Positions 27,095 to 64,000 of a DNA stretch of 64,000 nucleotides are shown here, piece by piece (within the stretch, counting starts at the first letter, position 1; each line of letters starts with the position of its first letter). The notes beneath the pieces are model-generated. The model had not been told where the DNA came from and made no database searches. It was given only the letters and a program-made list of their open reading frames with translations. The position numbers and the translations under genes were made by a program. The DNA is from Asterias rubens (taxonomy: Eukaryota), in the NCBI RefSeq assembly GCF_902459465.1, contig NC_047082.1, positions 8,246,001 through 8,310,000 of the forward strand, given 5' to 3'.

Positions 27095-30000
27095 ATGTTT
27101 CGATTGTTTCGTCTTTGGGGAGGAAGGTGTTGCCCTTTGTCCGTACCAAGTATCAGGGCAGTTATTTACGTTGCGGTGTGCTCATACTTCTTTACAGGTA
27201 AGATTGTATTTATTGGTAATGTAGGAATTATGGTATAATATAAATTATAATTCGGTAAAACTTTAATGGTTATAATCATTGTCAAAAAGGCCGAATTGCT
27301 TGCACCTACGGTATTCATTTTCACGTATGAGAAACAATAATGACTTTCATTATACAACTTTTAGAACCAAACAAATGTCATTGGCTGTGATAACCTTTTA
27401 GCAAGTGTTAGTGAAATATGACCGGCTGATCATTGATGCCTCTCAAATGTTTTGTTTTAAACACTTATAAATCCGAATGTTTTTTTTTTTTTTTTTACAA
27501 TCCACACAATGCTCAGTTTTAAACACATCCAGTCCATTGATTTAAAATGTAGTTTATTTTGATATTTACATATTAAGACATTTGTTACTTTCCAGACCAA
27601 ATACAGGTGTAAAGGGGGCTGACAGGGGTAGGCCAACATAAGAATACCCCACAATCAATATAAAGAGACGTAGTAGTCAGACCACTGAATGATTGTTAGA
27701 GATTGAAACCTATAAAGTATAATACAAATTATAAAATAGTTGACTTGATATTGTAAACAATAAGAACAAATTAATGCTTTAGGAAAAAACAGAGTATTAA
27801 ACAAATCCATGTTTAACAATGGTAGAAAGATTGTCAATCTATGACCCGAATTTGACTCGACCCCTCGGTTGAATTGGACAAGGTCAAAGATTGTGGACGA
27901 TTTAATGGTTTAAGGGCAGGTCGCTTGCGGCAGAATGTTTTCAAAAGAATGAAAGTGAGTCGTATCCCAAAGACCCAATGTGTGTGATTGTGCATGGGAT
28001 TAAACTTTAGTAGGCTGAATACATACACACATAATAGTTTTCTTTTATTTGCTGAACTTTATTAAATACAATTTGAATATGAGGTTGGGTGTGGAAAGGT
28101 TATATCCTCCATTTGTTTATTGTCTTCAAGAAATCTTTAAATGGGGTCTTGATCAATCAAGAACATACCACGCTAATACGACATGTATGGGTGAGGTTGT
28201 GCCTCTGATGTTCACAATACAAGCATTTCATGGAATTTGGCACACAGAGAGAGAAAGTCACGAGTTGGGTATTTTGGATATTGTGTGCTTCAAATTGATT
28301 GCAAAGTACATAGCCATCACCTGAAACAGCTTACAGCCAGTATTATCATACCAAAGCTTGTCTTCATTTGAAGAAGAAAAAAAAACACACAAAAGTTCAG
28401 CATTTTCCAGTTTCAACACAATAATGCATACCTTTATTTGAGTCGCACTATTAGTAAAGATTTTGAAATCGTTCCTAAAAATAAATATACTTTATGCTCT
28501 CACAACTACTCGGCTTATATTGATCAACGGTGTGTTAAATGTGCGCAATATTTAAACTTGTTAAAGTAAAAAATTCAACCAACTGATTTTTTCCCCTGCC
28601 GGTTCAGGATTGGCTGATGCTCATTGCACTGGTGGCTTATTTTGCGAGAGTCCATCCTACAGCTATAGAGCTCGTCATGACGGTAAACCAGGCGACTGCT
28701 ACGATAACACAACGGTGCTGACTTACACGTGCACACAGGGTTTCCAACAAAATGGCGCCAGTTTTTTATCAACGTGTAATAGCACGTCAGGCGAGTGGAG
28801 CAACAAGGGATCTTGTGATATAGGTTCGTTTTTGAGAACTAAAACAACTTTAAGTGATGTTTGAAACTTTACATGGTGTGAATGATGAAAAGACATATAG
28901 ATTATAGTAAAATTGCAGGTACAACCGTGTCTCTTTTGGAGGAAGTGTTGGCTCTGAAAAAAAACAGATTTTGTAAACTTTTATTGCTCCTTTCAGAGCC
29001 AACACCCCCTCAAAAGATAAGTATTACATGATTGTCCCAGCAAGTTTACTAAAACCTATAGTTTATTGTTAAAACAGCTTTGTTGGTAACCAGACAATAG
29101 GGCGCCCGTGGATGTTATGTTAACACTTGCATACAACATGGAGGAGTCTAACCTCCATGCATGCAACACCCACTTACTAACAAAAGTTGTCTGGTACATT
29201 ATGAAAAAAAACCTCATCAACATCAACGTTTATGAACTATGCAAACCCATAACCAAAAGGAGTGAAAATATACTCTTTCCTCTTTTTAATAACAACTTTC
29301 AGAACAGCATATATAAACAACACTCTTACTGTTGACCCTCCATTATTTGCAGTAAGCACACAATAACGGTAAGCAATGGTTTTTGTATTAACTGTTTAAT
29401 TTGAATTTGATATTTTTAGGAACTTTATTTTGTTGTGATATTTTCCAGATTTGCTGTCAATTGTGGTTGCGACTAGTCTCTCACTTACTGTTTTACTTGT
29501 CACTGTTACAATGATCTATATGGTACGAAGAAGTCGAAGGTAGGAACCGATTATAAATTCCACCATTTGGTTTGATAAAAGTGTTCGGGGCTGTCATGAA
29601 TATGGTCTGGTTCAATGACTTTATTACTGTTTTAAAATTATCGTCACCAAACAAAATGGCTGCTTACGCGTGACGTCAATACATTTTTCGTTCATACAAA
29701 CCGAATGTTCATTATTGATGTGCTATGACATTTTGTTTGAGTCTCTGAACGTATGTTACTGTGCTGTAGACTTGATTTCGAGTCGCTGGGTTCATTAACT
29801 GCTCCTCAGGGCTCATTTTCGTATGCAGTTAGAGGGCGCTATTTCAGATTAAGGTGATACAAATGTCAGACTAAGAAATCAGAATAACCCAGTAAATGAT
29901 CTGCAATAATTATGTTAACGCTCTCTGTTTTTAATATCTAAATCACATTGACACCTTGTGTTAACAGGACGAGGCTGTACGACACCAATGACGACGTACC

Positions 30001-30606
30001 TGCGCAGGCGCAGACTTCATCTGTCACTCTCGTGAACGCAGCATTCTCCTATGACCAGTCGGATATCCCAGAACCAATCTATGCAAATAACATATGGTTT
30101 GAACAGGACGCCAGACCATCGCTACCATCCAACCAAGATACCAGTCGGTATGAATTAAAACCAGTTGAATTTCTTGTGTTGTTATATTGTGGCATTTTTG
30201 GGGCTTGTGAATCTACCAGGGAAGTAACAACAACCTCAGTCAAATTGACACTGCTATAATTAAGCCGTCAAACTTGAAGTACTTATACAACTTCGATTTC
30301 GTTTTTTTCTTCAGGGATTCTTCAAAGAAACCAGTTCGAGCAATGAAGCCCAATCCAAAGGGGAAGCAAGCACCACGTCCCCCTGTCCACAAAGTAAGAC
30401 CGACCATCGAGCACGGATCTATACATGGGAAGGAAATTGCAAACGGGCACAACAATGATTATGATTTTGACGACGATTTTACAGACGAGGATGATTTCAC
30501 TGATGGTGAATACGAAATTCCTAATCCGTTCCCAATTGCGAACTATGACTACCCGCATGAGCAGATATACATGAACCAATCTCACTTTCTACAACAAGAT
30601 GGCTGA
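27095..30606 (+). CDS. Single Sushi-like domain type I TM receptor, paralogue 1 (about 293 aa), with long acidic Tyr-rich tail
   Basis: Exons 27095-27197 (SP), 28608-28823 (6-Cys Sushi-like, C..GFQQNGAS....C...SGEW...GSCDI), 29449-29539 (TM), 29968-30147 and 30315-30606. Phases are 1,1,2,2 and the 882 nt are open. Confidence 0.8.
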
Positions 30607-33348
30607 CAAACTACAGATTGCTTTCGTTAAAGGCATTGGTAATTACTCAAAATAATTTTTAAGCATAACAACTTACTTGGTAACGAGCAATGGAGAGCCG
30701 TTGATAGAAAACATTGTGAGAAACGGCTCCTTCTGAAGTAATGTAGTTTTTGAGAAAGAGGTTATTTCTCACTCGAAATAAGACTTCAGAAGACTATTGC
30801 TGAAGCCTTTTATTATGCATCTGAAAGCACACAAAGTAATGCAACAAGGGTGTTTTTGCTTTCGTATTACTCTCCTACAAAATCGACCAATTGAACCCAA
30901 GTTTTCACAGGTGTGGTATTTTATGCATATGTTGGGATGCACCTACAAAGTGAGAATATGGTCTTTGACAATCAATACCTAACGTGTCCAGTGCCTTTCA
31001 AGCAGCTTGTTGTTGTTTGTGTGTTTGTTTGCTTAGTTGGGTGTTTGTATGGTTGTTTTTCTGTGTTGTCGTTCGTTGTTTTTTTCTTCTTCTGGTTGGG
31101 CTCATGCAATGTGTCTTAACAACTCTGATAATCAATCCTAGTTTAAAATATATGTATATATTTTTTTAATTAATAATAATTTTGTATTCAAATTTGTATA
31201 TATTTTGTGTACAATTTACCTGAACTATTTCCCCACCAAGCATAACGGTAAACAACGAAATGGTTCTATACTTTAACTCATAAAAAATGTGGATAAGTTT
31301 AAAGAGGTCTGACTTGTTATGCTCAGCCATTTAAATTCCGATTGTGAAAATAATAAATATTTAATCTGTATTGATCAAACCCAAATTGCTTTTTAAACCG
31401 CTCATTGTTTTTACGACTGATGTAATGCAGAGATTTGTTTCAAGTACATTTTTAAATTTATTTATTATTAGTCCACAGTATCAAGCTCAGTCTATGATAA
31501 GCAAATATTACTATAATCTACAAAAAGACTACATTCGATGTTCAAACTAAATACTACAAGGGAGTCCAGTGAGGAACAGCCGTCGATTTCACCAATAACT
31601 TAGGATTAATCTTAGGACTTAATAGGACGAGTTAAGTTCCGTATCCGATCCGAAGGGGTAGGACGCATTGAACCCATCCCAAGTTAGGGCGGGTTACTAG
31701 TTCTAACTCGAGATAGGATTAATCCTAGCGTTTTGTGAAATCGGCTGCAGGAGCCGTAAGAGAACAACGTAATAGAATGGGACAAAATTACATGGCACTA
31801 GGTGGACTCAATGAGCAAGCTATTTTTAACCTAATTATGCAGAAGAACATACGTAAACACAACACACATAATACACACATACAAAGCACAAACACTACCG
31901 AATAATCAGGTCAGCAAGGGTGAATAAATAAGAAGAGTAAACCATTGGCATGAATTAACAGCAAATTTGAAATTATCAGACACGTGTTCTTTGTGCAAGG
32001 GTTTACAAGGTGAACCGACGCAATCTGCGGCCAACTTAGGGCAGAATTACCGGGCGAACTCCCACGCTTAAAGGGACACGTTGCATTGGATTAAGCGATA
32101 TGGGCTCTGAAAAGCGTTTGTTATAAAATTGATATGGGTGAAGAAAAAAAAATGTTTAAAAAAGTAAAACGAGATTCATCTAAATGTGACTCGAATTTAT
32201 TTATTTTTTTCACTTGGGGAACAAACATATATGGTTTCTTAATTTGGAATGACCAAATGTTTGACTCCAATAAATGAAAAGAAACCACACTAGTCCATCT
32301 AAGCACGGTTATTTACCATGCATGACAAAGCACACGGAACGAACGTCCGCAGTGCAGATGTCCCATGATGATCTTTTCCTGGAGATTCTGTCCCCGATTC
32401 TATGGGAAATAACTTGGGCTGGAGGAAGATGATTAAAAGAGGGCGTTATCAGAAGAAGTTTGTACACAGTTTGCCTATATATATAAATAATAAAACAAAT
32501 TATGTTGTGTAAAAAGTGCTATATTGTGCAGAAACGTATGTACTTTTTAAAGGTTTTCTTTGTTCTAGTTGTACCCCAAAGAGAATTTCTTAATAAAGGG
32601 GAATAATAAGACAACATTGGGAAAAAGCCCACCTACCGCATCCGTAAGGATGTGTGCTATTGTCTTCTTTTTCTTCGTGATAAGCGCGTGCATCTCAGTG
32701 TATACTAAAGTCTAGTCGACAAAATAGTTACCAGCAGCATTATCATTTATAACCGATTCCAACTGTGATACTGAAGTTACAAGATTTATACAAAAAGCTT
32801 TGTTTGAGGGCGCTATTAATTACGTATAATGACGTCATTGATTTCCTTACAAATGTTTATTACTTTTTAAAATACGCACAAGTTTAACTATTGTCAGTTT
32901 GAGAGATGTGTCCTATAAACAAGTACAACCAAAACATTTGGCACCATAAGTTAGCATTTGGCAAAGTAAAGGTATACCATTCAGCAATGTCACTATAGGG
33001 TATCTGGGTCATTTTACGGCAAGTGAATTTCATTACAAAGGTAGTTAGATTATGCAAATTGATGCGTGTCCTTTTTTTGGCCTTTTTATAACTGAAATGT
33101 GTATGTAATTTTTTACGACTATTGTGTGATAGTATTAAACGCCTCAAACTCGATCATCCGCGAACATCGTACCAGGAAACGACATACTCATGGTTTATAA
33201 GACTGCATATAACAACAACATTTTTGACCAAATGCAGGTGTCAAAGTTGACAGTTTGTAGCTTATATTTAGGAAATTAACGAGGTTTGGTTTTCAGGTGA
33301 GATTTACAAAGAACTTTCTGTCGTGTAGTTGGCTTCGAAAAGGACTTG

Positions 33349-36300
33349 ATGGGATCTAGATTCCCGTTGATGACTGCGGTTCATATAGCGGTTTTGGCGT
33401 TCCACTATGGTGCAGGTAATCTTCAATTCTTTTAAATCATTATTTGCTTAGTTTTGGTATAACACAGAAGTAGTTTTTGTTTACCATAAATTATCTTTGG
33501 GACTGAATTAACTACAGTAAGAATCATCTTTTGAATGGGTAAAGAGATAAGTTATTTTATTTTTTGAAACTACTCAGGAGAAATATTTAAAACATAACAA
33601 CCGAAAAGTGTCATTGAAAACAAGAATGTTGACGAACATACGAACCACCGTTGCTTATTTCAATAGACTGTTATCATGCTGCCACCATTTTGGTCATGTT
33701 CCCTGTATCCCATAACAGTAATGTATGCTAATACAGGATGCCTTCAGGATGCCTTCAGATAAATGTTGTCAAGCTGATCATAGCATACTAATCGAATCGT
33801 CGACGCTTCAAAATTAACACCCATATTAATGCTTAATAAAAACCATTTAATTCGCTCTTCTTCGAAGAAAAAGCGTAAAATTTACACTTTTGCTCATTTT
33901 GAAAAGAAATTTGAATAAATTATACTTAATGTTTATACGGCCAAAGGGCTCGTCCACTGGTGGGCCTCCTTTTTGCTAGCTCTTTTAGCCTTTGCAAAAG
34001 TTATGTGCAATAGATTTGGGATTTCCCCCATGATCAAAAGGCGGTCCATGCACATAGCAAATGTTTGCGCAATAAATTGGGAATTCCCATTAAAAAGGGA
34101 ACCATTTAGACATACCCATTGTAATAAAAGTTGGTGACGTTGATCTCTGTAATTAAAGCTGCCGCGGTAAATATTTTAAGTTCTTCTTTGCAAAGACCCG
34201 TAAAAGTAGAAATATCGCTGCATCTTGTAGATCTTGTGGTAAAGGGATCCGCAGCCGCCAAAACGCTCAAGGATTTATCCGTTCTCGAGTTAGGACGAGT
34301 TAAAGCCATTGGACACTTTCGATAAACAGTATTGTCCAAGGCCCACACTTCGTGTATCCATGGAGATTCCTCCATGGTGTATCACAACTTATATATAAAA
34401 CAACAAACCTGTGAAAATTTAGGCTTAATTGGTCGTCGAAGTCGGGAAAAAATAACGGGAAAACCTACCCTTGTTTCCGCACGTTTCGCCGTGTCATGAC
34501 ATGTGTTTAAAATAAATCCGTAATTCTCGTTATCGAGAATTGATATTGTTTTAATGGTTTCTCAAAAAGTAAAGCATTTCATGGATTAATATTTCAAGAG
34601 GAGTCTTTCACCATTACCTTCTGTAAACCCTGTCAGTTATTTGTAAATCTGTGAACTTTTTGGTTTGTTTCTGTACCGAAAGTGTCCAATGGCTTTAAAC
34701 CCGTCTATACTTAGGATGGGTTTAATGCGTCCAAACGTGTTCGAATACGGGACTTAGGGACTTAGGAGCTTACATTGGGGTGTGAAACGGCTCCTAGAGG
34801 TATAGCGGTCTAGAACCCGAGAAGTGCCCCATAAACACAACAAGTTATCCAGAAACCCTATTGTTCATACTACTCATGCACCCCAAGAAATAATAAAGTT
34901 GAAGGAACACGTTGCCTTGGATCGGTCGAGTTGGTCTTTGAAAAGCGTGTGAAACCGTTTGCTATAAAATGCATATGGTTAGAAAGATATTTTAAAAGTA
35001 GAATACAATGATCCACACAAACTTACCTCGAAATTGCTTTCCTTTTCCTTTGCGAACTAACACGGTCGGCCATTTATGGGAGCCACAAATTTGACTCCCA
35101 TATTATGGCCGACCATGTTAGTCGACGAGGTAAAAGGAAAACCACGCCATTTCGAGTGATACTTGTCTGGATCATTATATTCTACTTTTAAAATATCTCT
35201 CTAAGCATATGCTTTTTTTGACAAACGGTTACAAACGCTTTTCAAAGACCAACTCGACCGATCCATTGTAACGTGTTCCTTTAATAGTGTAGCGACGGTG
35301 ATCTTATCACTGGTTCCCTGTGTGGCTTGCTTTTCAGACTTGGTAACCGCCTACTGTTATGTACCAATGTGCCCACGACCCCATGTTACATACCCAGAGA
35401 GCATTGTTGAGGCAGAGGATTGCTACAAAAAAGCTACAGTCATCTCGATCGGGTGTGCTGCTGGATTCCGGAAAAATGGCGCCAGTTACTCCGTAAAGTG
35501 TGATGGTCAGTCCGGCGAGTGGATCCCGGTTGGATCTTGTAGTATAGGTCGGTTAAATTTAGATTTCCATTTGATTCATGAAAATCTTCCCCTATCCAAT
35601 ATTATAGCAGTTAAAGGCAGTGGACACTATTGGTAATTACTCAAAATAATTATTGGCATAAAACCTTTCTTGGTGATGAGTAATGGAGAGAGGTGGATGG
35701 TATAAAACATTGTGAGAAACGGCTCCCTCTGAAGTTCCGTAGTTTTCGAGAAAGAAGTAATTTTCCACGAGTTTGATTTCGAGACCTCAGATTTAAAACT
35801 TGAGGTCTCGAAATCAACAATTAAACCGTACAACTTCATGAGACAAGGGTGTTTTTTCTTTCATTATTATCTCGCAAGTTCGATGACCGATTGAGCTAAA
35901 ATTTTCACAGGTTTATTATTTTATTCATATGTTAAGATACACAAACTGTGAAGGCTAGTCTTTGACAATTACCAATAGTGTCCATTGCCTTTAAACTTCT
36001 AATTGTTTTAATAATTTCTGTTTCTATGGCTGTCCCTATTTTGCAGAATTGTCTTCTTTCATCTTGGGCACTGTGGCGTTTGTACTGGTCGTACTATCGG
36101 CTGCTTTCTTGATCTTTACTTTTCGAAGAAATCGCAGGTACATTTGACGCTTTGGTTAAATTAAAATTGTTATATTGGGATAAAGGCAATCCCAAAAGAT
36201 TCACTCTGCATCTATTTCTGGGTTTAATTTGTATACTGTTTGTAGACGAGAAAAACTATAACAGACATGCCATTTTATAACAGAATGTCCGAAAATGTCA

Positions 36301-38741
36301 AAATATGAAGAAAGAACCGCATGGCAAAGTAATCGCTATTTTGGAACTTAAGTTTATTTGAAGTGAAACACTTGCACTGTCCTAAAAGATAAAACAAAGA
36401 GCTGTTTGTGACCGAATAATGTGTGTGAACCTCACATGACATGGAGGTGCTAATGAATCATTATCATTATGGAGGTGCCAATGAATCATAAGTTTATGTT
36501 TGGGCTAATGAATCATTATTATTTTACTCAATTCATCACAGCATGCAAAAGAAATAACTATTATATTGCCTTTGTGCCCGGGTGGCAGGAGATTCTTTCC
36601 CCCACAGATACCCCCCCGTCCCCACCCCACCCCACCCCACCCCCACATTACGGCTAGTTAGTCTTACTACTTTTACAAAATAAAGTCGCTGAAGTCGACC
36701 AGCAGAAATGTGTGTTTTTTCTTCCTGCAATACTTTCCCCTCAATTCGGATTGTTGAACTGCTAAGTGTTAAGAAAGCATCTAATCTGAATTGGTATTTT
36801 TTCTGTGTGTTTAGTAGAAGAACTATGCAGGTGACCAATGTTTCTCGAAGAGCAGGCCAGAATGAAAGGTACATAAAATAATCACACAGAGTTAGCACGT
36901 GTACTGACAGTACTGCATCAGCTGCAGTAAGAGTGAATTGCAACTGACGAAAATCATATTCCAATATTCAGTTTAGAAAAAACAATTGAGACAAGTGTTA
37001 TGATAATTATTTTAAAACCATCCTTTGAAATTATGTAAAGTGCAACATAATTGTACATGTATGGAAGGTTGTGTTAAATAAATAAAGATGTATAAAGATT
37101 TATGCACGAATTAGTGTTTTGCTGAGACAGCTACAGTACACGTGCTTCCCCGGTGGGTTTTTAATAGGGAGGATGAATAACGTCCTCAACAAGCTGACAG
37201 ACAAGGAGTTCCAGATGGCCACAATGAAGAGTGAACAAAAAGTGCAGTCTTGGGTTTTTTTCTGTGTCTGTAAATACCCTTTTTCGACATAATTCTTTTG
37301 GCTCTCATAATGCACTGACAAACATGTAACATTATTATTGGGCTCTTACCAGTGGAAACTTTGGAACGCTAGGTGGCAGCAGACTTACTAGGTAAATGTC
37401 AATTGTTTACGTAGTTCTGAGCATGCGCACGTTACTGAGAATAATGGAATAAACCTGGTAAGTCTGCTGCCACCTAGCGTTCCAAATTATTGTGCCCAAT
37501 TGAAATTACCCGTACTGATGCACTTCAGTCTCCTACCCTTTATCCCACCTCTTGAAAACCTTAATTGACGTCATCAACGCCGCCATTTTAGAGACAAACC
37601 AATATTGAAACAATGATCGGTTTTGTATGCGCAAGGCACATAATGGGGGCTTTTATGAACTCTATGTGGCAGGGTAAATCAATTGTCAATTGGTTTTGTG
37701 CGCGTGCTCAGAACAACGTTACCTGGTAAGACTGCTGTCACCAAGCGTTCCAAAGTCTCCCATTGCCCAATAAACAACCTCTTTTGACTTCTAGGCGCCG
37801 TGCCTTACTCATAAGCCTAAAATGCATGTCAAGTGTCTCTAGGATGTTCTCTACTCAACCCAACCTCTGTTTTCTGGCGTCGGGCCAGCATAAAATCTTA
37901 TTTTACCTATTGTTTCTAATACAGAACCGAACACGTCGAATCACGTCGAACATGTCGAATCACGAGGGTAGTCAACATAGGGTACGACCCGCGGGGGCCG
38001 TCCAACGACATTCACCTCGCTGAGATCCACCCCGACCCACCCTCCCGCATCCGAGGACTTATAAATCCTAATTGTACAAACAATCAGCAAGAATTTAGTT
38101 TCACTAGCAGTGACATGTACGGGTAAATATTACATTAATCCAAGGCTACTTAAAATTCATAAAGTTTTGTTTTGTACAAGGTTAAAGCCTGGTTCAAACT
38201 TCCTGCGACTGAATGCGAATGCGATATGAAACTTTGACGTCACGGGGCCGTTTTTGTTTTGCAGGAGTAGAGCACAGTCAACTGCTGCGAATTTTTCGTT
38301 GCGAATTTTTGACGTCAAAGTTCGTATCACATTCGCATTTGCAGGAAGTATGAACCGGGATTCAATCCGGCTTTTGATGAAACCAAAGCCTACAGATACG
38401 GATTTAAAAAGGCACTCGATAAACATAAATTTGGGTGTTTAAAACCCAAAGTTTAAGAGCTTATTATTTTATTAAAATTTACTCCCGAAATACGATTATT
38501 ATTTCAAGTTACGGATAATTATTAGCATAAGTTATTGTTGTTAGCATTACGGATTAATTACCCGTAGAGTACTTCAGGTTAAAAGGTCATGCATCATGCT
38601 GTCCAGTTACGTCTTTCCTTAACCACAAATTTAATACTTTTTGCCCTGTCGTACGTAACCACCAACTTTCCATCTGTTGATCTATCACTCAGGCCACCTC
38701 CAAATAGCCAAGTACCTGACGTCACACTTCGAGGCTCATAG
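33349..38741 (+). CDS. Single Sushi-like domain type I TM receptor, paralogue 2 (about 204 aa)
   Basis: Exons 33349-33415 (SP), 35338-35547 (6-Cys Sushi-like, C..GFRKNGAS....C...SGEW...GSCSI), 36047-36137 (TM, 91 nt as in paralogue 1), 37925-38122 and a tentative last exon at 38693-38741. The phases are the same as in paralogue 1. Confidence 0.7.
34018..34088. promoter_or_regulatory. Candidate inflammatory enhancer: NF-kB site, C/EBP palindrome, NF-kB site
   Basis: GGGATTTCCC (34018-34027), TTGCGCAA (34065-34072) and GGGAATTCCC (34079-34088) lie in intron 1 of receptor paralogue 2. Motif match only. Confidence 0.45.
34300..34698. mobile_element. TTAA-flanked MITE family 3
   Basis: ttaaagccattggacactttcg ... 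cgaaagtgtccaatggctttaa. A structurally similar element lies at about 47425-47803. Confidence 0.75.
34901..35284. mobile_element. TTAA-flanked MITE family 2
   Basis: TIR aaggaacacgttgccttggatcgg ... ccgatcc...acgtgttcctttaa. Other copies at about 20595-20880, 32068-32330 and 48836-49152. Confidence 0.8.
35611..35994. mobile_element. TTAA-flanked MITE family 1 (Kolobok/T2-like), full-length copy; the most abundant repeat in the window
   Basis: TIR ttaa|aggcagtggacactattggtaatt ... aattaccaatagtgtccattgcct|ttaa. Other copies or fragments lie at about 6533, 7266, 11631, 21232, 21790, 30627, 51983, 53951, 58591, 60380, 62022, 62151 and 62550. The superfamily call rests on the TTAA target and AGG termini. 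Confidence 0.85.
38182..38360. mobile_element. Short MITE (ggttcaaacttcctgcg ... gcaggaagtatgaaccgg)
   Basis: Inverted termini. A related copy lies at about 51395-51541. Confidence 0.65.
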
Positions 38742-41700
38742 TTAACGGCAGATACTAGCCTGACCCGATGGCCGGACCTTGCAGTATACCTTTGACCGAC
38801 TGACCTTTGATCTCGCACTCATTTCAACCGGAGATTCGCAGTCGGTTCTCATGTTATATAGGCTATACATAACTTGAATAATTAGCATACATAGCGAGTA
38901 TAACTCTACATGAGCATTGTGCACTTGTACGCTGCATGCAGACGGTCAAAAGTACAAACTTATACATCACCTCGGAACAATCATAACACTCATATGGAAA
39001 GCTTAATATACGTCACAGCACAACCATCCAATGAAATCATTGTATTTAAATGCAATAATTAGGCCTGTAAGAACCCGTGTATTGTCTAAAGGCCGAGTCA
39101 CACTGCAGCGATAACGAAACATAGTTGTGATTCTGTCATTATTTTGGTTTAGTTCTATCGTCGTGGCCGTCTTGTGGTAATTGTATTGTTTGTTTGTTTG
39201 GTTTTGTTTGAGGAGTTAGTTTGAGGTGTTTGTTTTTCTGGTTGGGTGTTTTGTTTTTGCGTTTCGTTTATCCGTCTCGTTTTGATGTTATTGTTGTTAC
39301 TATACGCTTTGTTTTATAATTTAAATGATCTTATTACCTTCCTTTGTTTTGTAAAAGGCATCCCAGCTTACAAGCTTTGCTTTAATAGGCCATGCCTCCA
39401 TACAGTTTTCAGTCTTGTAACATCCTATTGTTTGTATTTGTATATTGTGTTTGTATGGAAATAAATGTTGATTGATTGAAAACGACAACGATAACAGCGC
39501 AAACATTCTATTGGTTGTATTGCTCCACTCAGAATCCGCCCATGCGCTTAATCAACCAATCAAGGGCGTGCATTTTTAACGTTCTCTTTTTCGTTTTCGT
39601 TCTCGCTATCGAGGCTTGTGTGACCAGTTTAGAACCGTTGTTGACCCTCCAGACCTTACCTTCATCTCACGGACGCCACCAACTTTGAAATGGTGTGTGT
39701 GCAGTTCAACCATCATACTCGGGGGAATTTGAGAGACGGAAGCTTGATGCAGCCGTAAGCAACGTCTCAATGACAAATCCGTATTGTACTCCCAACAATA
39801 TTTAACATAAAACAGCAGTGGAAATACTATCTACTTGCCGACTTGAAACTAACCTTACAATTTGGCTTATGTAACTCGATGTCAAAAGAACTTCAACCTT
39901 TTAAAAAAAGTATATATATTTTCTGTAATAAATAAAAGAAACAACCAAAATAACATGTTTTGTGTGGGTCCCTCTTCTGGTCACTCAAATTCCCTCGGGG
40001 AATAGACGTACACTAGTATAAAACCTCATTGTCGGTCATTATGTGTATACTAATATTTTGTCTTTGCTCATTATTATTCCAGAAAGTTATAACTTTAAAG
40101 GCTGATATAATCATTGTGGCCAGCCTCATGTTGGTATTATTATTAAAATAAAAGTGTATTGAGTTCATTATTCAATAAAGTCATTGTTTTCAGATTATTA
40201 AAATTGATAAGTCAGTCTGCTCGTAAATAATGGTTTATTCATTAAAAACACAGTAATAGTTGGGAAAAACTTGGACTTTCTGGGGGGGGGGGGAGGGACC
40301 TCACAGGATTTTCCCGCCAGGAACCACCACAAGTTTTCCCAGGAACCCCCACAGGGTTTCCCCAGGGATCCCACAGGGTTTCAACATACACCCCAAAAGA
40401 TGGTCTCATCAGGAATACCGACAGGATTTCCACGGGATCGCACAGGCACACCTCATGATTCCATAAGGAACCCTTCAGGGTTTTCACAGGAACCCCACAA
40501 GAACACCATATGGGTTCCATAGGAGCCCCCCACAAGGTTTCCACAGGGACCCCCACAGATACCCCACAAGGACACCATATGGTTTCCACTTAGGTTGTGA
40601 TAGTACTCGCAAATCTCATTGATTCAGGCGTAGAGTACTCGTTTCATACCTCAACTACCCAAGGGATAGTAGAGAGTAGTGTGATGTTAGCTCTTTCAAA
40701 CAGTTGTGAGCAACATGCATTGGCACCATGAATTCAGTCATGCTGAATCAGGAGTCATTTAGCTACGCAGATCATTCCAATGACCCACTCTCAGGGTTAA
40801 ACTCAATACCCACGGTATGTATTTTTTGGAACTAAATATAATAGTTTTTCAATTGAACATCCTCGGCCGGCCTAAGCCATATGAGGTCACACACATTAAT
40901 TAAGTGTGAACTACTGCGCATGACAGGTTGTTGAATGAACAATTGATATTGAATAAATATCAAGTTTTATATGTATGCATAATAAATTAGATTACGACCG
41001 AGCTGCTTTGGCACAAAAAGTTGATTTAGCATTAAAATATCTCGCTGTTTTGCACATGTTACTGTCAAAAGTGTCAAGCCATTATTGAGTTTGACTGGTA
41101 TTTAGCTGCTGTTTCCTTAATCATAACAATTTTTGAGTGGTAATCTGATTTTACTAAAGCAAGATTTTTTTTAGCAATTCTTTTTGCTTAGCAGCTCTCT
41201 GAAACGAGGCCCAAGTCATAAGGTGTGCCCACACTTTGTTCACACTGTGGGCCAGGAGATAACAGTTTGTTCACAATTTGGATTGACAGACAATCCCACG
41301 TACTGTCATAAGGTGTGCCCACATTGTGGGCCAATAGAGGGAAATATGAAAATATAACAGTAGCACACTGTCGTAAGGTGTGTCCACACTGTGTTCCCAC
41401 TGTGGGCAAAAAGAGGATTATCATAGTGTGTCCACACTGTGGATTGACAAACAATCACACTGTCATAAGGTCCGCCACATTGTGCTCACATTTATGGGCC
41501 AGTAGAGGAAATAATGAACATTATGTGTGGATAATTAATCACAAGGTGTCATAAGGTGTGTCCACACTTGTCCACACTGTGTACATAGTTGGCATTCAAA
41601 TGGTTTCCCTCTTAAACCTTTGAGTCCATTTATAACGAGTTATTATATGTTAATATTTTAGTCAACTTGCATTTTCTTTATTTATGATGAAACGTAATAA

Positions 41701-55300: not shown

Positions 55301-56653
55301 TTTAATTCTTAGTTCACAAGTGTAGTTGTTGAAAAGAAACCAATAATGTGTGACATTGTAACGCTAAGTGACAACAACGGATTGCCTTGACAAGACTACT
55401 GCCACCTAGTGTTCAATTTACTCGTATGTTTTACTTACCAGGCCGGAGCAGGTTGACAGACTAATCATAGAGTCTGGTTCCGACTCCACCTCCCCCGTGT
55501 AAAAGCAATCTGTGCGAACTGACAAAGGAACCGGTTGTCCATTCTCCTGAATCTTCTCTGCGTAAAAGTCTTCGGAGAAGAGGCTGGAGTCTTGGTGCAC
55601 GACCAACTTGAGGTTGTTACCAAAGGCGTCTATGTTTATATTGAGTGAATCTCCAACAATAGCATCGCTGCATATGCCTCGTGTCACGTCATCAGTTACG
55701 TACTTTGGGTAAATAATTTCATACTCGGGAGCTACGGATAAACAAAAACAAATAAGTAAAACAAGCAACAACAAGCAAATAATGTACCGCAGAAAAAATT
55801 CTATAATCAAGGGATACGATCTCAAGACCGACCCGTTCGTAATCATCAGGCCCTTTTCGAATCAACGGCTTCGGCTTTGGATTCGTTTTCCGGATCCGTT
55901 GTCAATCGAGGCCAAGCTAGCCTGAGCCGAAGCCGTGGTTTCGAAAAGGGCCCGAGAATAGCCGAATCTTACCATCGTGGAGATTGTCCACTCCGAATAG
56001 TTGCTTCAGCTCCGAGTCATGAAAATTATCCGCCAACTGTATCCAAAAAGAAATTGAAAAAGGGGATGAAATTAAATCATTTTGTGCTAAAGTAAAAGAT
56101 TCCGCCGAGAATTTAAAACACGCTCATTGCGAACATTATTATCCTATACACCAAGGGACTTTTCCAAACAAATTGTTTAAAACCCTACGATACACTCAAC
56201 TGTAGAGTCGTACTAAACTTTGGATTCGTTCAACTAAAAGTGATACTGCTGGTTAAGTTAAAATGACTGTCTTTTGAACTGCAGGATGATATGCAGAACT
56301 CAGCTGAAAACATATCATCTTTCAATTTCCCAAAAGTAAAAAAGAAGAGAAACTAAAACATTTGTAAATTGATCAGAACATGGTACTCAGAATTGTTGCA
56401 AGTAATATGTTTGCCAATTTTGCAAAACATAATGTGACAACCGTTTTTTTGACAAGGTGCAAACTTTGGAGAAATTTAAGCCAAAGAATAGACTATAATG
56501 TGTAGATTCGTTCCTCCTATTCGAATCTAGACTTTCTTGTCCATTCTCCCGAAAAGTTTGTTCCTTCAGCACACTCACCATAGGAGTACCGGCGGCAAAC
56601 GCCACTGATAGAAGAAAACTCAGTGCAGAATACATCATTCTTGAGTTCGTCAT
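52383..56653 (-). CDS. ADAMTS-type M12B (reprolysin) zinc metalloprotease: signal peptide, prodomain and catalytic domain (at least 393 aa; 3' end unresolved)
   Basis: Exons 56653-56579, 56036-55973, 55731-55439, 55258-55126, 54977-54835, 54325-54245, 53789-53668, 53203-53063 and 52511-52383 have consistent phases. Motifs: PEYEIIYP, CFYTGEV, LSTCSGL, IEPL, NCG (cysteine switch), LELGVFV, PSLG, HWDNAL, AAHELGHNLGMRHD, GFIM (Met-turn), WSTCS. Confidence 0.88.
53420..53565. mobile_element. Short MITE family (ctaggtggcagcagacttaccagg ... cctggtaagtctgctgccacctagcg)
   Basis: Inverted termini. Copies at about 37350-37485, 37640-37765, 46535-46662 and 51670-51805. Confidence 0.7.
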
Positions 56654-59110: not shown

Positions 59111-59774
59111 GATGAGGAAGAGATCTGACAGAAGTGGGCCCAATTTTTTTTATTCTTTGGCAAAAGTAATTTTAATTACTCAAAAGTTTTATATACGCCC
59201 TGTATCTGTTGTATGTATAAAAAAAAAAATAATAATAATAATAAAAAAAAAAAAAAATAATAATAATAATAATAAAAATAGAAAAGAAAGTGTTTTCTGA
59301 CAACCATAGGGGAATGCGTCATACTTTAGTCTTACAAACACCCGTTTTTGCTCTGTTAAGGTACTTTATGTACACCCAGGCGATCCCATTGAAAGTGGGT
59401 CCCCTTTGTGACGTCATGCTCTGTAAACACACCTCCGAATGCAGTTCCATTGAAAGGCAACAGAGCATAACATTCTTTACCATGTAAATCTCTCTCGTGA
59501 CTAATAATAGACCCGTCCTTGTCAAGCAGCTATGGGCAGTCAAGTTATGAATAATGTTTTGATGATAGAATGACTAAATTACTCCGTCAAATTATGAGTT
59601 TGAACTTGGTACTGTTCCCGTTGGTAGTTTTCAGGACTAGATCTGTCGATAGCGATCGAATTCGATAAATAGCAACAAGGAATTTATACTGTCCTCCCTG
59701 TCGTCTGACTTGTTTGTGTTGTGAAGTGACTGAGTTGTGAGACTTAGCTCTGGTGTGGCATGAGAGCGTCCAAC

Positions 59775-62700
59775 ATGACCGGTGCGCGGAAGCAACGAGC
59801 GAGGATGGAATTGGCGTTGCTTTATGGTGTTTCATGTATCCTGATCATTACAGGTAAGTTAGTGGTTAATCCATTTGTCTTCAAAAGCAGTTGTTGGGGT
59901 AATTTGGGTCCGCAATTTGGGGGTGAGGATGGGGGTTTAGGGGATCGTTTTTGAGCGGGGAGAAGATTCCACAGCAAATAATTTACATATTTTGACTTGG
60001 ACATTATCCATTTTAACTTGGGTTTATTTAGAAGACAATATGAATGATATCAGAAGTGGCAAACCCACGTCACTTCGCACTCCAGTCTTTTCGTACCCAA
60101 GACATTTTGCACCAAAGTCATTTTGTATCCAAGTCATTCCGCACCAAAGTCACTTCGTACCTAAGTCACTTCGTACCCAAGTCATTTCGTTCGTACCCAA
60201 GTCACTTCGTACCTATAAAAGTCACTTCGTACCCAAGTCATTTCGTACCCAAGTCACTTCGTACCCAAGTCACTTCGTACCCAAGTCATTTCGTACCTAA
60301 GTCACTTCGTACCCAAGTCATTTCGTACCCAAGTCACTTCGTACCCAAGTTTCTTCGTACCAAAGTCACTTCGCACCCATACGGGGAGCTGTTGTGAAAC
60401 ATTGTGTGAAACGAGACTCCCTCTGAAGTAACGTAGTTTTTGAGACATGTAGTTTCTCTCCAATTGTTTTTATTTAACTATTTAAATATGAAAAAGACTT
60501 CGGGCCTGTGAGGCCTTTCTTCCTTCTGAAAGCACACATACATGTATACCGTTTTTTCTTCATTATTTTTGTGCAACTTTGATGACCAATAATGTGCTCA
60601 GTTCATGTATTTGCTATTTTATGGATATGTTGGGATTCACAAAGTGAGGGTACTGGTCTTTGACAACCACCTAGAGTATCCAGTGTATTTAAGCATGTTG
60701 GACACAGCGGTCGGTTAATATCCCTTTGCTTATTGTTACTTATTTGTACTTCATATTATTGATATTATGGCATATAGAATTGAGGAAATGCAAATTTCTT
60801 TCTATAACTTGAATTGATTGATGTTTTGGTTGAGTAGTCACACTCAGTCGGACTCGAAGTCTGGTGTCTGAGTCAGTAGGGGTTGGGCTGAAACACGGTC
60901 AGTACACCTGTGTCCTTAGGCAAGACACTTAACCATAATTGCTACTCACACCAAGGAATATGGGTGAAAAACAGTTGCAAATGTGTCCGAAAGCCTCCTA
61001 CCTTGAATACCGTTTGAGTTGACTATCAAAATATGTTCGAATTGTTTACTTTCTAAATACATGTACGTGACAGAAAGTATATGCGGATTGTATTTAATGG
61101 TCAAACAGTAGAAGGGTGTTAGACCAAACAAAGTTCGGGTTAGTTATCTGCGAGGTGATAGTTGGCCAGCAGGCCTGTATGCTTCATTTTTGAAAGTGCA
61201 ATGGCACCAATGCATCATCTCCTGGGCACATCAATAAAAGACATTTTTAAATTCTACTGGAGCATTTCATTAAGGGAATCAAAGCCAAAGGGCACGGAAT
61301 ATCAGGCCTGGTTGGTTTAATAACGCTTAAAAGAGCATTACAGAATTTGCTTTTGCTAAAAAAAACACTTGCTGGCAGTGTAAGCACTTTTATGTTATCC
61401 ACCATATTATACATAAACTGACAAAACCTAGAAATTTGAAATCGACAGGCCATCTTTGCCACAAGAAAATAGTGGAAACCGATTACTTTTACATCGATTA
61501 AAAAAAACACGAATGAAACACTCACTCAGCGATAAACTCAAACGGGATATTGTTTTATTTATTTCTCATCAGTATGACATTTCAGACAAAATATTTCAAG
61601 GGATGTTCTACTATCATCATCTTTAGACCGAGAGCTAAATGTAGGTTAGTCTGTGAACTTAGACGAGTTTTTTTTCCTACAAAATCTGTAATGTTCATTT
61701 CATGTATGTCTTAAGATTAAGATCTCTCAATTAACAGCTGAGGTATTACTTTTGTATGTCTACGTAATTGTATACAGGATCAGCAGATGCACTGTGTAAT
61801 GCTTGCAACTGCACGGCTCTTGGGAACTCAACTAGAGAAACAATCAAAGCAGACAACGACTCGAATGGTGATACATGTTCATGTACAATCACATGTTCTG
61901 CAGGTTTCCAACGAAATAGCGTCAGTTACATTGCAATGTGTGTGGAACAGGAATGGGACAGAGATGGATCATGTGACATAGGTAAGTTAACTGACATAAG
62001 TTAAAGGCACTGTACACTATTGGTATATACTCAATTGTCAGTGTTAAAACTTACTTGTGTATGCAACATTTTGAGAAATGGCTCCCTCTGAAGTAGGCCT
62101 ATTGTAGTTTTTGAGAAAGAGGTAATTTTTCACTCAAAATATCAAAAGACTTAAAGGCACTGGAAACTATTGGTAACTACTCAAAATAATTGTTAGCATT
62201 AAAACTTACTTGGTAACAATCAATGGAGAGCTGTTAATAGTATAAAACAATGTGAGAAACGGCTCCCTCTGAAGTAACGTAGTTTTCGAGAAAGAAGTAA
62301 TTTTCCACTAATATTATTTGAATTTGATTTCGAGATCTCAGAATAAGATTTTGAGGTCCTGAATTCAAGCATCTGAGAGCACACAGCTTCGTGTGGCAAA
62401 GGTGTTTTTTCTTCCATTATTATCTCGTAACTTTGGCGACCAATTGAGTTCAAATTGTCACATGTTTGTTATTTTATGCATATGTTGAGATAAACCAAGT
62501 GAGAAGACTGGTCTTTGACAATTACCAATAGTGTCCCGTGTCTTTAAGGTCTGAAGCCTTTCTAAGGCATCTGAAAGTACAACAATTTTTGGGGTGTTTT
62601 TTCTTGCTTTGTGCTCTTGCAATTTCGATGACCAATTGAGTCCAAATTTTCAAAGATTTGTTATTTTATGCATATTATGTTGGGATACACCAAGTGAGAA

Positions 62701-64000
62701 TACTGGTCTTTGACAATACGTTGGGGAGGTATGTGCTTTCTGCTCAACCAGCCAGGCTTCTGATGGATGATACCCAAGCCTTCATCCGCATGGACTATAA
62801 ACGGGGTAACCCAGGAGTAAGTGGCAACGACCCCTGAACCATAGTTGTTGTACCCCACGCCTGTATAAGGGGCCTTCAGGCCACAAAAGTAATAACCAAA
62901 AGTATCCTGACCAGTGCCTTTAAGAAATCATTTTTTCTTTTCTTTTTTTTTGGGGGGGGGGGGGGGGGGGGAGTCGGCTGGTTGCCGAGGTCTATCCTGC
63001 CAAGTATGAAAAGTGATCGCAGATTGAAGTTAATTAAATGGGTTGTTTGTGTGTTTATTGATTCCAGAATCTTCGGTTTTCATCGCCGCAGCTATTATGT
63101 TAGTCGTCATTTTAATCTTCGGTCTTTGCGTTATTCTCCTGTGTAAAAGGTGGGTACCACTGAAGCATAACACAATTTGTGCCAACCAGAAATCATTTAA
63201 CCAGTTAAAATACTATCAGGTAGCATTTGCAGCTGGTTTCTTGTTTATGCTTACAGACATACCTTTGGTTTTTGGAACCTTTCGATTTTCCAGGGGATTT
63301 TAGACATTTGCGTTCGATTGTCTATTATAGTAGTTGAATACAATGAAATCAATCCGGTGAAAAAGTTAATTTCTAAAGGTGGTCGCGTTTTTATGAGAGA
63401 AGAAACTACAGAGAAAAATGTCCATGCAGGAATTGGGACAATCGCCGTAGGATCACAACATCTGAGAAGCGTTACCGCTGTAACGCTTTTTATGTTCAGC
63501 ATTTTGATTTAAAGTGATGACTTTTCCACAACCGCAGCACTACGAAAAGAAATATGACCCAAAATGCATTATACATGGATTATAAATACCTCGTAAGTTT
63601 GCATTGATTTAGCAAGAACAAAAAGCAACTGGGCATGTTTCAGTCACTTGTTGAGGAGGGTGCCATTTGACATAAATATACTCAAGTTACGAAGAAATTT
63701 AAATTGTGTGTGTTTTCTTTGCGTTACAATTCGTTTTTCTTCTAAGATGGCGGCAGGGTGACGATGCTGTGTTATTTATTAAAGATTGTATGCCTATGTT
63801 TCAGAATACATTGTAGCCTACGCATAATAATAATCACACGTGTTTTTAAAATGAACTAAGGAAAGTCAGAATTATTGACGATTGTCATATACCCTTTCCG
63901 TTGTCAACTAATTACTGTCTATTAATTATTAGCTCCCTTTTATGTTTGCCTTTCAGGAGTAAACGCGAACGCAAAATGTATAACTATGACATATCCCTCG
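59775..64000 (+). CDS. Single Sushi-like domain type I TM receptor, paralogue 3 (3' end outside window)
   Basis: Exons 59775-59853 (SP), 61778-61981 (8-Cys Sushi-like, C..GFQRNSVS....C...EW...GSCDI), 63068-63149 (TM) and 63957 to the window end (RSKRERKMYNYDISL). The phases are the same as in the other paralogues. Confidence 0.75.
60065..60380. repeat. 16-bp minisatellite (aagtcacttcgtaccc)n
   Basis: About 18-20 visible units in intron 1 of receptor paralogue 3. Confidence 0.85.

What the first reader, a model, noticed from the sequence alone, without database searches (positions are those of the whole stretch)
27095..64000. Family of minimal single-Sushi-like receptors with extra cysteines and divergent signalling tails
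Seen: three genes (27095-30606, 33349-38741, 59775 onward) share exon layout and phases (SP, Sushi-like, TM, tail). They also share the motif C..GF..N..S....C...EW...GSC.I, which abuts the TM with essentially no stalk. The ectodomains are only about 70 aa, carry 6, 6 and 8 Cys rather than the canonical 4, and are highly divergent in their N-terminal half. Established: Sushi/CCP domains bind complement or cytokines (e.g. IL-15Ralpha and SUSD3 use a single Sushi). Inference: this is a lineage-specific, diversifying family of small immune-type receptors or co-receptors that automated annotation would fragment or miss.
Basis: partly seen in the sequence, partly recalled or inferred. Interest (0 to 1): 0.75.

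Follow-up and report, generated by a model that had tools for sequence, protein, structure and literature searches.

The report
Starfish single-Sushi membrane protein gene cluster
Three neighbouring starfish (Asterias rubens) genes encode small, expressed cell-surface proteins with one six-cysteine Sushi module sitting directly on the membrane and very different tails. They belong to an unstudied family found so far only in sea stars, they resemble vertebrate SUSD3/SUSD6 in build, and nothing yet shows an immune role.

Summary
Three + strand genes share one layout: a signal-peptide exon (phase 1), a 204-216 nt Sushi/CCP exon (phase 1-1), a TM exon (phase 1 to 2) and tail exons. The window is Asterias rubens.

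- **Gene models.** My G2 model is 100% identical to NCBI's "uncharacterized protein LOC117304330 isoform X2". A. amurensis has a 293-aa gene call at the G1 position, the same length as my G1 model. G3 exon 2 is covered exactly, and only to its exon edges, by a spliced RNA contig in two runs.
- **Domain.** It is a true CCP. The family profile hits CR2, CR1, factor H and DAF in the PDB. For the G2 AF2 model, the 50 listed PDB Foldseek hits (the best by E-value) are all CCP-containing proteins. An N-terminal Cys and a "DCY" Cys, probably paired, come on top of the four canonical ones.
- **Family.** Members lie in same-strand tandem arrays in Acanthaster (at least 5) and Patiria (at least 3). All named ones are "uncharacterized".
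- **Selection.** Between the two Asterias species, G1 is constrained (dN/dS 0.43). G2 is nearly neutral (0.83).
- **Tails.** No ITAM, ITIM or ITSM occurs. The G1-type tail keeps F-x-D-D-F-T-D and Y-x-N-Q across orders.

The nearest known kind is SUSD3/SUSD6-type proteins. The immune and "annotation misses it" claims are mostly unsupported.

The parts
27095..27197 (+). G1 exon 1: start codon and signal peptide, ends in phase 1
   Evidence: The orthologous exon in A. amurensis lies at L001:3563-3665.
28608..28823 (+). G1 exon 2: 6-Cys CCP/Sushi module (72 codons, phase 1-1), two N-x-S/T sites
   Evidence: Pfam Sushi scores E 0.015, 16.1 bits, below the 20.7 cut-off. The valvatid-only HMM gives E 5e-15.
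29449..29539 (+). G1 exon 3: D-L plus TM helix plus RRSRR stop-transfer, phase 1 to 2
29968..30147 (+). G1 exon 4: tail part 1, includes the Y-A-N motif
30315..30606 (+). G1 exon 5: tail part 2 with P-R-P-P, the acidic F-D-D-D-F-T-D repeat, Y-E-I-P, Y-M-N-Q and the stop codon
   Evidence: It is 98% identical to the A. amurensis exon. The motifs are shared with Acanthaster P0043 and Patiria P0077.
33349..33415 (+). G2 exon 1: signal peptide
   Evidence: 100% match to NCBI protein P0071.
35338..35547 (+). G2 exon 2: 6-Cys CCP module with the canonical C-P-R-P start
   Evidence: AF2 model with pLDDT 73.9. All 50 listed PDB Foldseek hits are CCP-containing proteins.
36047..36137 (+). G2 exon 3: TM helix plus RRNRR
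36818..36868 (+). G2 exon 4: short tail exon
   Evidence: The acceptor is shifted by 3 nt in A. amurensis.
37925..38122 (+). G2 exon 5: tail, with an in-frame 18-nt tandem duplication at 37928-37964
38693..38741 (+). G2 exon 6: last tail exon and stop codon
59760..59853 (+). G3 exon 1: signal peptide; possible start codons at 59760, 59775 and 59805
   Evidence: The RNA contig carries 39 nt that lie upstream of exon 2 and off the stretch that was laid.
61778..61981 (+). G3 exon 2: 8-Cys CCP-like module, three N-x-S/T sites
   Evidence: A 338-nt RNA contig in runs X1 and X2 covers 61773-61979 with 0 mismatches and stops at the exon edges. The AF2 model has pLDDT 71 and gives weaker hits, most of them to CCP-containing proteins.
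63068..63149 (+). G3 exon 3: TM helix plus C-K-R
   Evidence: RNA depth in this bin matches that of the exon-2 contig.
63957..64000 (+). G3 exon 4: start of the tail (contains Y-N-Y), runs off the window
   Evidence: RNA depth is present in the last bin.

Best explanation
**Shown**
- G1, G2 and G3 are three intact paralogues in Asterias rubens. Direct evidence of transcription and splicing exists for G3. For G1 and G2 it is indirect: RNA-run word shares and identical or equal-length gene models.
- They belong to a sea-star family of small (about 200-480 aa) type I membrane glycoproteins.
- Each has a signal peptide and one complement-control-protein (Sushi) module. That module is followed after only two residues by an acidic residue and the TM helix, then a basic stop-transfer and a cytoplasmic tail with no recognisable domain. 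From its composition and lack of matches I take the tail to be disordered; this was not tested.
- The module keeps the four canonical CCP cysteines and the Trp. It adds an invariant Cys five residues before Cys I and a near-invariant Cys in a D-C-Y motif.
- The family sits in same-strand tandem arrays in Asterias, Acanthaster and Patiria.

**Inferred**
- The two extra cysteines form a third disulfide. It would staple the N-terminal extension to the membrane-distal pole, next to the most variable part of the module. That part is the likely ligand surface.
- The module is flush with the bilayer, so it probably binds a partner on the same membrane or at very close cell contact.
- The tails do the work through short linear motifs. 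The G1 type keeps F-x-D-D-F-T-D plus acidic residues and a C-terminal Y-x-N-Q. From general knowledge, these look like a CK2/acidic-cluster or AP-2-ear type motif and a Grb2-SH2 type phosphotyrosine site.
- One Acanthaster member has four L/M-Y-A-x-V/I repeats plus a Y-A-N-I site, five Y-x-x-hydrophobic motifs in all.
- The most likely role is therefore a set of non-catalytic receptors or transmembrane adaptors. Paralogues with different ectodomains would couple to different tyrosine-based signalling or sorting outputs.
- This is a functional analogy to SUSD3/SUSD6-type proteins and transmembrane adaptors. Membership is not proven.
For: **Gene structure and expression**
- Exon layout, phases and open frames.
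- The G2 model is identical to NCBI XP isoform X2.
- A 293-aa gene is called at the G1 position in A. amurensis, and the locus is collinear.
- RNA(?) runs X1 and X2 hold 0.33-0.34 of the sampled words of 28560-30650; G1 exons 2-5 with 3' UTR fill about 0.39 of that stretch. They hold 0.14-0.25 of the words of G2's 35330-38800.
- A spliced contig covers G3 exon 2.

**CCP identity**
- The 3-sequence profile hits CR2-like, SVEP1 and E-selectin-like proteins.
- The 13-sequence profile hits PDB CR2 (7e-37) and DAF CCP4 as a single stretch (about 1e-10). The canonical cysteines align, and the family's C-x4-C aligns with a CCP-CCP junction.
- The G2 AF2 model gives only CCP-containing proteins among the 50 listed PDB hits and the 30 listed Swiss-Prot hits.
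- Patiria P0077 passes the Pfam Sushi cut-off with 24.7 bits.

**Family and conservation**
- Six-Cys signature.
- Tandem arrays.
- Tail motif conservation across orders.
- Motif census.
- Constraint on G1.
- Protein-language-model look-alikes are SUSD3-like and SUSD6 clusters, scoring 0.92-0.94.
Against: - No experiment or tissue-resolved expression was available.
- The disulfide pairing could not be read from the model, because coordinates are not exposed.
- The motif assignments (Grb2-SH2, AP-2/CK2) are pattern matches recalled from general knowledge. Such short motifs occur by chance.
- G2's tail has only two Tyr and evolves at or above the neutral rate, so it may have little sequence-specific function.
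- The G3 model is of modest confidence, and its fold hits are weak.
- The sea-star restriction rests on searches with limited sensitivity for a 70-aa domain.
Confidence: 0.55

Rival explanations
1. The family is the sea-star expansion of the SUSD3/SUSD6 lineage. It works like SUSD6 or SUSD4, as a cis-acting escort that steers other membrane proteins to degradation or trafficking, rather than as a signalling receptor.
For: The nearest protein-language-model clusters for P0071 and P0043 are "sushi domain-containing protein 3-like" and "sushi domain-containing protein 6", scoring 0.91-0.94 with 176-187 shared features. A membrane-flush CCP favours cis interactions. The acidic and F-x-D-x-F motifs fit sorting. 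Papers describe SUSD6 as a negative regulator of MHC-I and SUSD4 as a binder of GluA2 (PMC11968365, PMC9083331).
Against: No alignment-based link to SUSD3 or SUSD6 was obtained. They are absent from the 70 profile hits and from the 30 listed Swiss-Prot structure hits. From my reading of the tail sequences, no P-P-x-Y motif for NEDD4-type ligases is present; the motif census did not include that pattern. The extra Cys pair and the tails are not known from SUSD3/6. The look-alike search gives leads only.
Confidence: 0.22
2. They are immune receptors or co-receptors in the strict sense. They would be expressed on coelomocytes, and their variable ectodomains would be driven by pathogens or by complement-like ligands.
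For: The genes form a tandem, rapidly diverging family next to a lectin/CCP mosaic receptor gene (notes). The N-terminal half is much more variable than the C-terminal half. G2 evolves near neutrality. CCP modules commonly bind C3/C4 fragments (PDB hits).
Against: No ITAM, ITIM or ITSM occurs, and no charged TM residue is present. G1's ectodomain is conserved, with dN/dS 0.26. Known complement regulators need three or more tandem CCPs, from general knowledge. No tissue or challenge expression data exist. The A. rubens coelomocyte surface-proteome paper I checked does not mention these loci.
Confidence: 0.15
3. One or more of the three are decaying duplicates or prediction artefacts rather than functional genes.
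For: G2's tail has dN/dS above 1, an in-frame duplication and a shifted acceptor between species. G3 has lost the D-C-Y cysteine, sits on a long branch, and its 3' end is outside the window.
Against: All frames are open with canonical splice sites. G2 and its orthologue are annotated. RNA contigs hold G1 and G2 exon-sized shares and a spliced G3 contig. An even Cys count is retained in all three.
Confidence: 0.05

Closest known systems
Vertebrate SUSD3 and SUSD6 (single-Sushi type I membrane proteins)
   Same: They share the overall build: signal peptide, one Sushi module, one TM helix and a domain-less tail of about 100-200 aa. They are the nearest clusters by protein-language-model features.
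   Different: No alignment-level relation was shown. The sea-star module has six Cys rather than four and no stalk. The genes form a multi-copy tandem array with unrelated tails. Orthology was not tested, because no reference sequence was available to me without typing it from memory.
Regulators of complement activation and receptors (CR1, CR2, factor H, DAF/CD55, MCP/CD46)
   Same: These give the best sequence and structure matches to the module. Canonical Cys I-IV, the G-F/Y motif and the Trp all align.
   Different: Those proteins carry 4 to 30 tandem CCPs, and from general knowledge they need several for C3b/C4b binding. Here there is a single module with an extra Cys pair.
IL-2R alpha / IL-15R alpha Sushi receptors
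   Same: They use a single Sushi (IL-15R alpha) or two Sushi modules (IL-2R alpha) as the ligand-binding unit of a type I membrane protein. IL-2R alpha matches the C-terminal half of the profile at about 4e-5.
   Different: Those receptors have a long stalk and short tails and bind four-helix cytokines, which are not known in echinoderms (general knowledge). No specific similarity was found.
Transmembrane adaptor proteins (LAT, SIT, PAG type)
   Same: This is a functional analogy only: a tiny ectodomain, one TM helix and a disordered tail carrying Y-x-N and Y-x-x-hydrophobic motifs.
   Different: No homology was found. Pfam SIT gives only E 0.62 for P0040. Adaptors lack a folded ectodomain and usually have juxtamembrane palmitoylation cysteines. 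Among the three window genes only G3 has a Cys at that position; Acanthaster P0043 and Patiria P0077 also have Cys at or near the cytoplasmic end of the TM segment.
Sea-star WSC-Sushi receptors with phosphotyrosine tails (earlier scan note s1-150315, same chromosome)
   Same: They are also Asterias rubens tandem genes with a Sushi module near the membrane and tyrosine-motif tails.
   Different: Those carry a WSC domain and a mucin stalk. The relation to this family was not tested here.

Membership tests
CCP / Sushi / SCR module (Pfam PF00084) | Four cysteines in the I-III, II-IV pattern at canonical spacing | tested here: met
   Family columns C11, C39, C54 and C67 are invariant. They align with Cys I-IV of CR2 and DAF modules. 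The pairing itself was not observed.
CCP / Sushi / SCR module (Pfam PF00084) | Conserved Trp between Cys III and IV, and G-F/Y after Cys II | tested here: met
   G-F is invariant. E-W is present in G1-G3. Trp is replaced by Phe in three valvatid members.
CCP / Sushi / SCR module (Pfam PF00084) | Score above Pfam's gathering cut-off (20.7 bits) | tested here: inconclusive
   G1 scores 16.1 bits, and G2 and G3 give no hit. P0043 scores 18.7 bits and P0077 scores 24.7, which passes. The family profile does hit solved CCPs strongly.
CCP / Sushi / SCR module (Pfam PF00084) | Small beta-sandwich CCP fold | tested here: met
   The G2 AF2 model has pLDDT 73.9, and all 50 listed PDB hits and 30 listed Swiss-Prot hits are CCP-containing proteins, with TMq 0.50-0.70. 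The G3 model is weaker: its hits are mostly to CCP-containing proteins, at probability 0.84 or less.
CCP / Sushi / SCR module (Pfam PF00084) | One module per phase 1-1 exon | tested here: met
   The exons are 216, 210 and 204 nt, all phase 1-1.
SUSD3 / SUSD6 orthologue | Specific sequence relation beyond the generic CCP, with conserved tail and synteny | not tested
   Only feature-based look-alikes were found. SUSD3 and SUSD6 are not among the profile hits or the listed Swiss-Prot fold hits. No reference sequences were at hand.
ITAM/ITIM-type immunoreceptors | ITAM (YxxL/I x6-12 YxxL/I), ITIM ([SIVL]xYxx[IVL]) or ITSM in the tail, or a charged TM residue for adaptor pairing | tested here: not met
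   A regex census of eight family tails finds none. The TM segments have no charged core residue.
Regulators of complement activation | Three or more contiguous CCP modules | tested here: not met
   There is one CCP exon per gene. No further family or CCP exon lies between the signal-peptide and TM exons.

The most novel reading that the evidence does not exclude
Sea stars have evolved their own family of non-catalytic tyrosine-phosphorylated receptors. A six-cysteine, membrane-flush Sushi module acts as the variable sensing unit. Swappable motif tails (Y-x-N, Y-x-x-hydrophobic repeats, acidic F-x-D-x-F) act as the output. This would be an invertebrate-deuterostome counterpart of vertebrate immunoreceptor and adaptor systems, built on a different fold.
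Probability: 0.15. Interest if true: 0.55.

Novelty: new variant of a known kind. Interest (0 to 1): 0.3.

Why it matters
The result gives a name and a structural definition to a set of "uncharacterized" sea-star genes. They encode single Sushi modules with an extra cysteine pair, sit directly on the membrane, and are arranged in tandem arrays conserved across two asteroid orders.

If the tails prove to be phosphotyrosine or sorting platforms, the family would be a compact model for studying how one small ectodomain is coupled to different intracellular outputs by exon-level tail swapping. It could also supply cell-surface markers, which echinoderm cell biology lacks.

As it stands this is a modest annotation-level advance. 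It does not bear on any long-standing question.

Tried and rejected
- **Pfam on the three exons.** Only G1 gave a hit, and it was below threshold. The Sushi claim therefore had to be tested with family profiles against the PDB and by fold prediction.
- **Finding the A. rubens G1 and G3 protein records.** Word-indexed searches with P0005, a mixed alignment and P0043 returned only G2-type, P0043 and P0077. Known alignment members (P0032, P0065) were not returned either, so these blanks say nothing.
- **Exact look-up of P0071's locus.** It failed, because only the longest isoform is on record.
- **tBLASTn of the Asterias tails against the Acanthaster and Patiria loci.** Nothing significant came back. 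Motif-level conservation only appeared in a direct alignment.
- **Read laying on G3.** The output was swamped by a dispersed repeat in intron 2, so the splice joints themselves are not in the printed joint table. Splicing is inferred from one contig's piece coordinates and from bin depths.
- **Ectodomain tree.** It resolves three valvatid orthogroups but not where G1-G3 attach.
- **Literature.** I found nothing on these loci.
- **Rejected readings.** The complement-regulator and IL-15R-alpha-like readings fail, because there is a single module, no stalk and no specific similarity.
- **Origin by duplication.** Duplication from the neighbouring lectin/CCP receptor is not supported. That gene's CCP exon scores far lower with the family profile (2e-6 against 1e-14).


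Full report
**1. What is in the sequence**

They lie at 28730-28816, 35454-35540 and 61894-61974, all on the + strand.

Reading the DNA around them and assembling exons by script gives three genes with the same plan.

| Gene | Exons | Product |
|---|---|---|
| G1 | 27095-27197, 28608-28823, 29449-29539, 29968-30147, 30315-30606 | open 293 aa |
| G2 | 33349-33415, 35338-35547, 36047-36137, 36818-36868, 37925-38122, 38693-38741 | 221 aa |
| G3 | 59760 (or 59775/59805)-59853, 61778-61981, 63068-63149, 63957 onward | runs off the window |

- All internal exons have AG/GT borders.
- Intron phases are 1, 1, 2 in all three genes.

**2. Not chance**

I built an HMM from Acanthaster and Patiria relatives only. 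It finds the three exons at E = 5e-15, 1e-14 and 6e-9 among 1218 ORF pieces of the window. The only other hit is a CCP exon of the upstream lectin-type gene (18782-19120) at 2e-6.

**3. Organism and annotation**

- A profile of the three exons, searched against 1.84 billion representative proteins, gave 70 hits.
- The best single-domain hit, P0005, is an Asterias amurensis "uncharacterized protein".
- Its relative P0071 is [quoted passage not shown]. P0071 matches my G2 exons at 100% (98.6% for the exon-2 match, which runs four residues past the exon edge), and my assembled 221-aa G2 product has its exact sequence. The window is therefore A. rubens, and G2 is annotated correctly.
- The A. amurensis locus L001 is collinear with window 24000-49000 at about 80-95% nucleotide identity, mostly 87-95%.
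- L001 carries a called gene with a 293-aa product exactly where G1's orthologous exons map.
- I could not retrieve A. rubens protein records for G1 or G3. The word-indexed search also missed known family members, so that blank is uninformative.

**4. Expression**

- Two runs labelled RNA(?) of the same organism hold 0.33-0.34 of the sampled words of 28560-30650. G1 exons 2-5 with 3' UTR fill about 0.39 of that stretch. The same runs hold 0.14-0.25 of the words of the G2 stretch.
- In both runs a 338-nt contig covers 61773-61979 with no mismatch. A further 39 nt before and 92 nt after do not lie on the adjacent DNA.
- The five extra bases at the 5' edge are identical between the end of exon 1 and the end of intron 1. 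The two missing bases at the 3' edge are AG in both exon 2 and intron 2.
- The bins holding exons 3 and 4 have the same depth as this contig.
- This is what a spliced e1-e2-e3-e4 mRNA predicts. The joints themselves were crowded out of the printed table by a highly repeated element in intron 2, so this is an inference from coordinates.

**5. The domain**

- Pfam alone is nearly blind to it. G1 scores 16.1 bits, below the 20.7 cut-off, and G2 and G3 give nothing.
- Among relatives, only Patiria P0077 passes, with 24.7 bits.
- The multi-repeat hits of the first profile are classical CCP proteins: CR2-like, SVEP1 and E-selectin-like.
- A 13-sequence family profile hits solved CCP structures strongly. 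CR2 scores 7e-37 and factor H 9e-27. DAF CCP4 matches as a single stretch at about 1e-10, and IL-2R alpha matches at 4e-5.
- In those alignments the family's four invariant cysteines fall on Cys I-IV.
- An AF2 model of the G2 module has pLDDT 73.9. It matches only CCP-containing proteins among the 50 listed PDB hits and the 30 listed Swiss-Prot hits.
- The G3 model has pLDDT 71.2, and its matches are weaker and mostly to CCP-containing proteins.
- So "Sushi-like" is correct: these are real but divergent CCP modules.

**6. What is special about the module**

- Across 13 members the signature is C-x4-C-x(16-20)-C-[YF]-x10-C-x2-G-F-x(10-13)-C-x(10-12)-C-x-I.
- Two cysteines are extra. One is invariant and lies five residues before Cys I. 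The other, in D-C-Y, is present in 12 of the 13 members.
- In the CR2 alignment the N-terminal C-x4-C lines up with a Cys IV-linker-Cys I junction of tandem CCPs.
- With no preceding module, the first Cys most likely pairs with the D-C-Y Cys near the membrane-distal pole. This is an inference, because model coordinates are not exposed.
- G3 has lost the D-C-Y Cys and gained three others. Its total of eight is still even.
- The last Cys is followed by x-I, then D/E, then the TM helix, in every member. The module therefore sits on the bilayer.
- The N-terminal half is much more variable than the C-terminal half. Among the three window genes identity is 18-29% against 48-52%. Family-wide it is 26% against 42%.

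**7. The family**

- The four Acanthaster planci hits lie on one scaffold. They form a same-strand array of 232-aa (Pfam Sushi), 200, 234, 337 and 477-aa genes within about 35 kb.
- Patiria miniata has a 200-aa Sushi gene followed by P0077.
- Scanning those loci with the exon HMM finds three further family exons with matching TM exons but no called gene. They are at L002:7032-7247, L004:4637-4846 and L004:15675-15890.
- A tree of the modules recovers three valvatid orthogroups. It leaves G1-G3 unresolved, with G3 on a long branch.
- Every single-module member found comes from Asteroidea. For a 70-aa domain in a database of that size, this is weak evidence of absence elsewhere.

**8. Evolutionary rate**

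Nei-Gojobori estimates between A. rubens and A. amurensis:

| Region | dN | dS | dN/dS | Amino-acid changes |
|---|---|---|---|---|
| G1 whole | 0.025 | 0.056 | 0.43 | |
| G1 ectodomain | | | 0.26 | 3 in 73 |
| G1 tail | | | 0.57 | |
| G2 whole | 0.068 | 0.082 | 0.83 | |
| G2 ectodomain | | | 0.71 | 10 in 70 |
| G2 tail | | | 2.4 | |

- The G2 tail value rests on 16 non-synonymous against 2 synonymous changes.
- Intron divergence is 0.04-0.07.
- Counts are small. They show purifying selection on G1 and near-neutral change in G2. They do not demonstrate positive selection.
- G2 also differs between the species by an in-frame 18-nt duplication and a 3-nt acceptor shift.

**9. Tails**

- Pfam finds no domain in any tail.
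- No ITAM, ITIM or ITSM occurs in eight tails.
- G1's last exon is 98% identical between the Asterias species.
- That exon shares three islands with Acanthaster P0043 and Patiria P0077: E-x-A-N-G, F-x-D-D-F-T-D followed by acidic residues, and Y-x-N-Q-x-F at the C-terminus.
- These short motifs have been kept across two asteroid orders, in tails whose remaining sequence has diverged too far for tBLASTn to find.
- From general knowledge, Y-x-N is the Grb2-SH2 preference. F-x-D-x-F is an AP-2 alpha-ear motif. T-D-E-D is a CK2 site in an acidic cluster.
- Acanthaster P0040 carries four L/M-Y-A-x-V/I repeats plus a Y-A-N-I site, giving five Y-x-x-hydrophobic motifs, and three Y-x-N sites.
- G2's tail is basic and has only two Tyr.

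**10. Comparison with known kinds**

- By protein-language-model features, the nearest clusters for P0071 and P0043 are chordate "sushi domain-containing protein 3-like" (0.92 and 0.94). "Sushi domain-containing protein 6" follows for P0071 (0.91) and unnamed chordate Sushi-protein clusters for P0043 (0.92).
- G1's tail alone resembles nothing, with a best score of 0.60.
- Reviews describe the SUSD group as mostly transmembrane CCP proteins. SUSD6 is a negative regulator of MHC-I and SUSD4 a GluA2 binder (PMC9083331, PMC11968365).
- The family is therefore best filed as a sea-star variant of the single-Sushi type I membrane protein kind. Orthology to SUSD3/6 is untested.

**11. Verdict**

- It overreaches on "immune-type" and on annotation failure.
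- It is only partly right on diversification.
- The mechanism I commit to is a membrane-flush CCP acting as a binding unit, coupled to motif-bearing tails for tyrosine-based signalling or sorting. That mechanism is inferred, not shown.

Noticed in passing
window 55418-55846 (-): An ORF matches the Reprolysin/ADAM propeptide family (PF01562, E 8.8e-6, above the cut-off). An ADAM/ADAMTS-type gene therefore lies on the opposite strand between G2 and G3.
   Followed up: partly
window 44510-46280: A 1.8-kb minisatellite with a 27-nt unit and about 74 copies shows strong GC skew. It is also present at the orthologous place in A. amurensis (L001 about 20270-22140).
   Followed up: partly
window 30640-30772, 35620-35990, 60400-60700, 62000-62720: Copies of a dispersed SINE/MITE-like element lie in the G1 3' flank and in G2 and G3 introns. 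RNA-run contigs matching it reach summed depths in the millions, and they swamped the read-laying output.
   Followed up: no
window 37928-37964 and 36815-36818: G2 exon 5 carries an in-frame 18-nt tandem duplication, adding six residues relative to A. amurensis. The exon 4 acceptor is AG in A. rubens but AA at the same place in A. amurensis, which uses an AG 3 nt downstream.
   Followed up: yes
L002:7032-7247 and 7616-7696; L004:4637-4846 and 5825-5905; L004:15675-15890 and 16387-16485: Family CCP exons with matching TM exons occur in Acanthaster and Patiria but have no called gene in the collection queried. They are probably unannotated members. The first two form a well-supported orthologue pair.
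   Followed up: partly
window 60063-60379: A 16-nt tandem repeat of about 19 copies lies in G3 intron 1.
   Followed up: no
window 18782-19120 (+): A CCP exon of the upstream lectin/CCP mosaic gene is the only other window hit of the valvatid family profile (E 2e-6). Its A. amurensis counterpart is probably the gene with an 869-aa product that runs off the upstream end of locus L001; this correspondence was not checked.
   Followed up: partly
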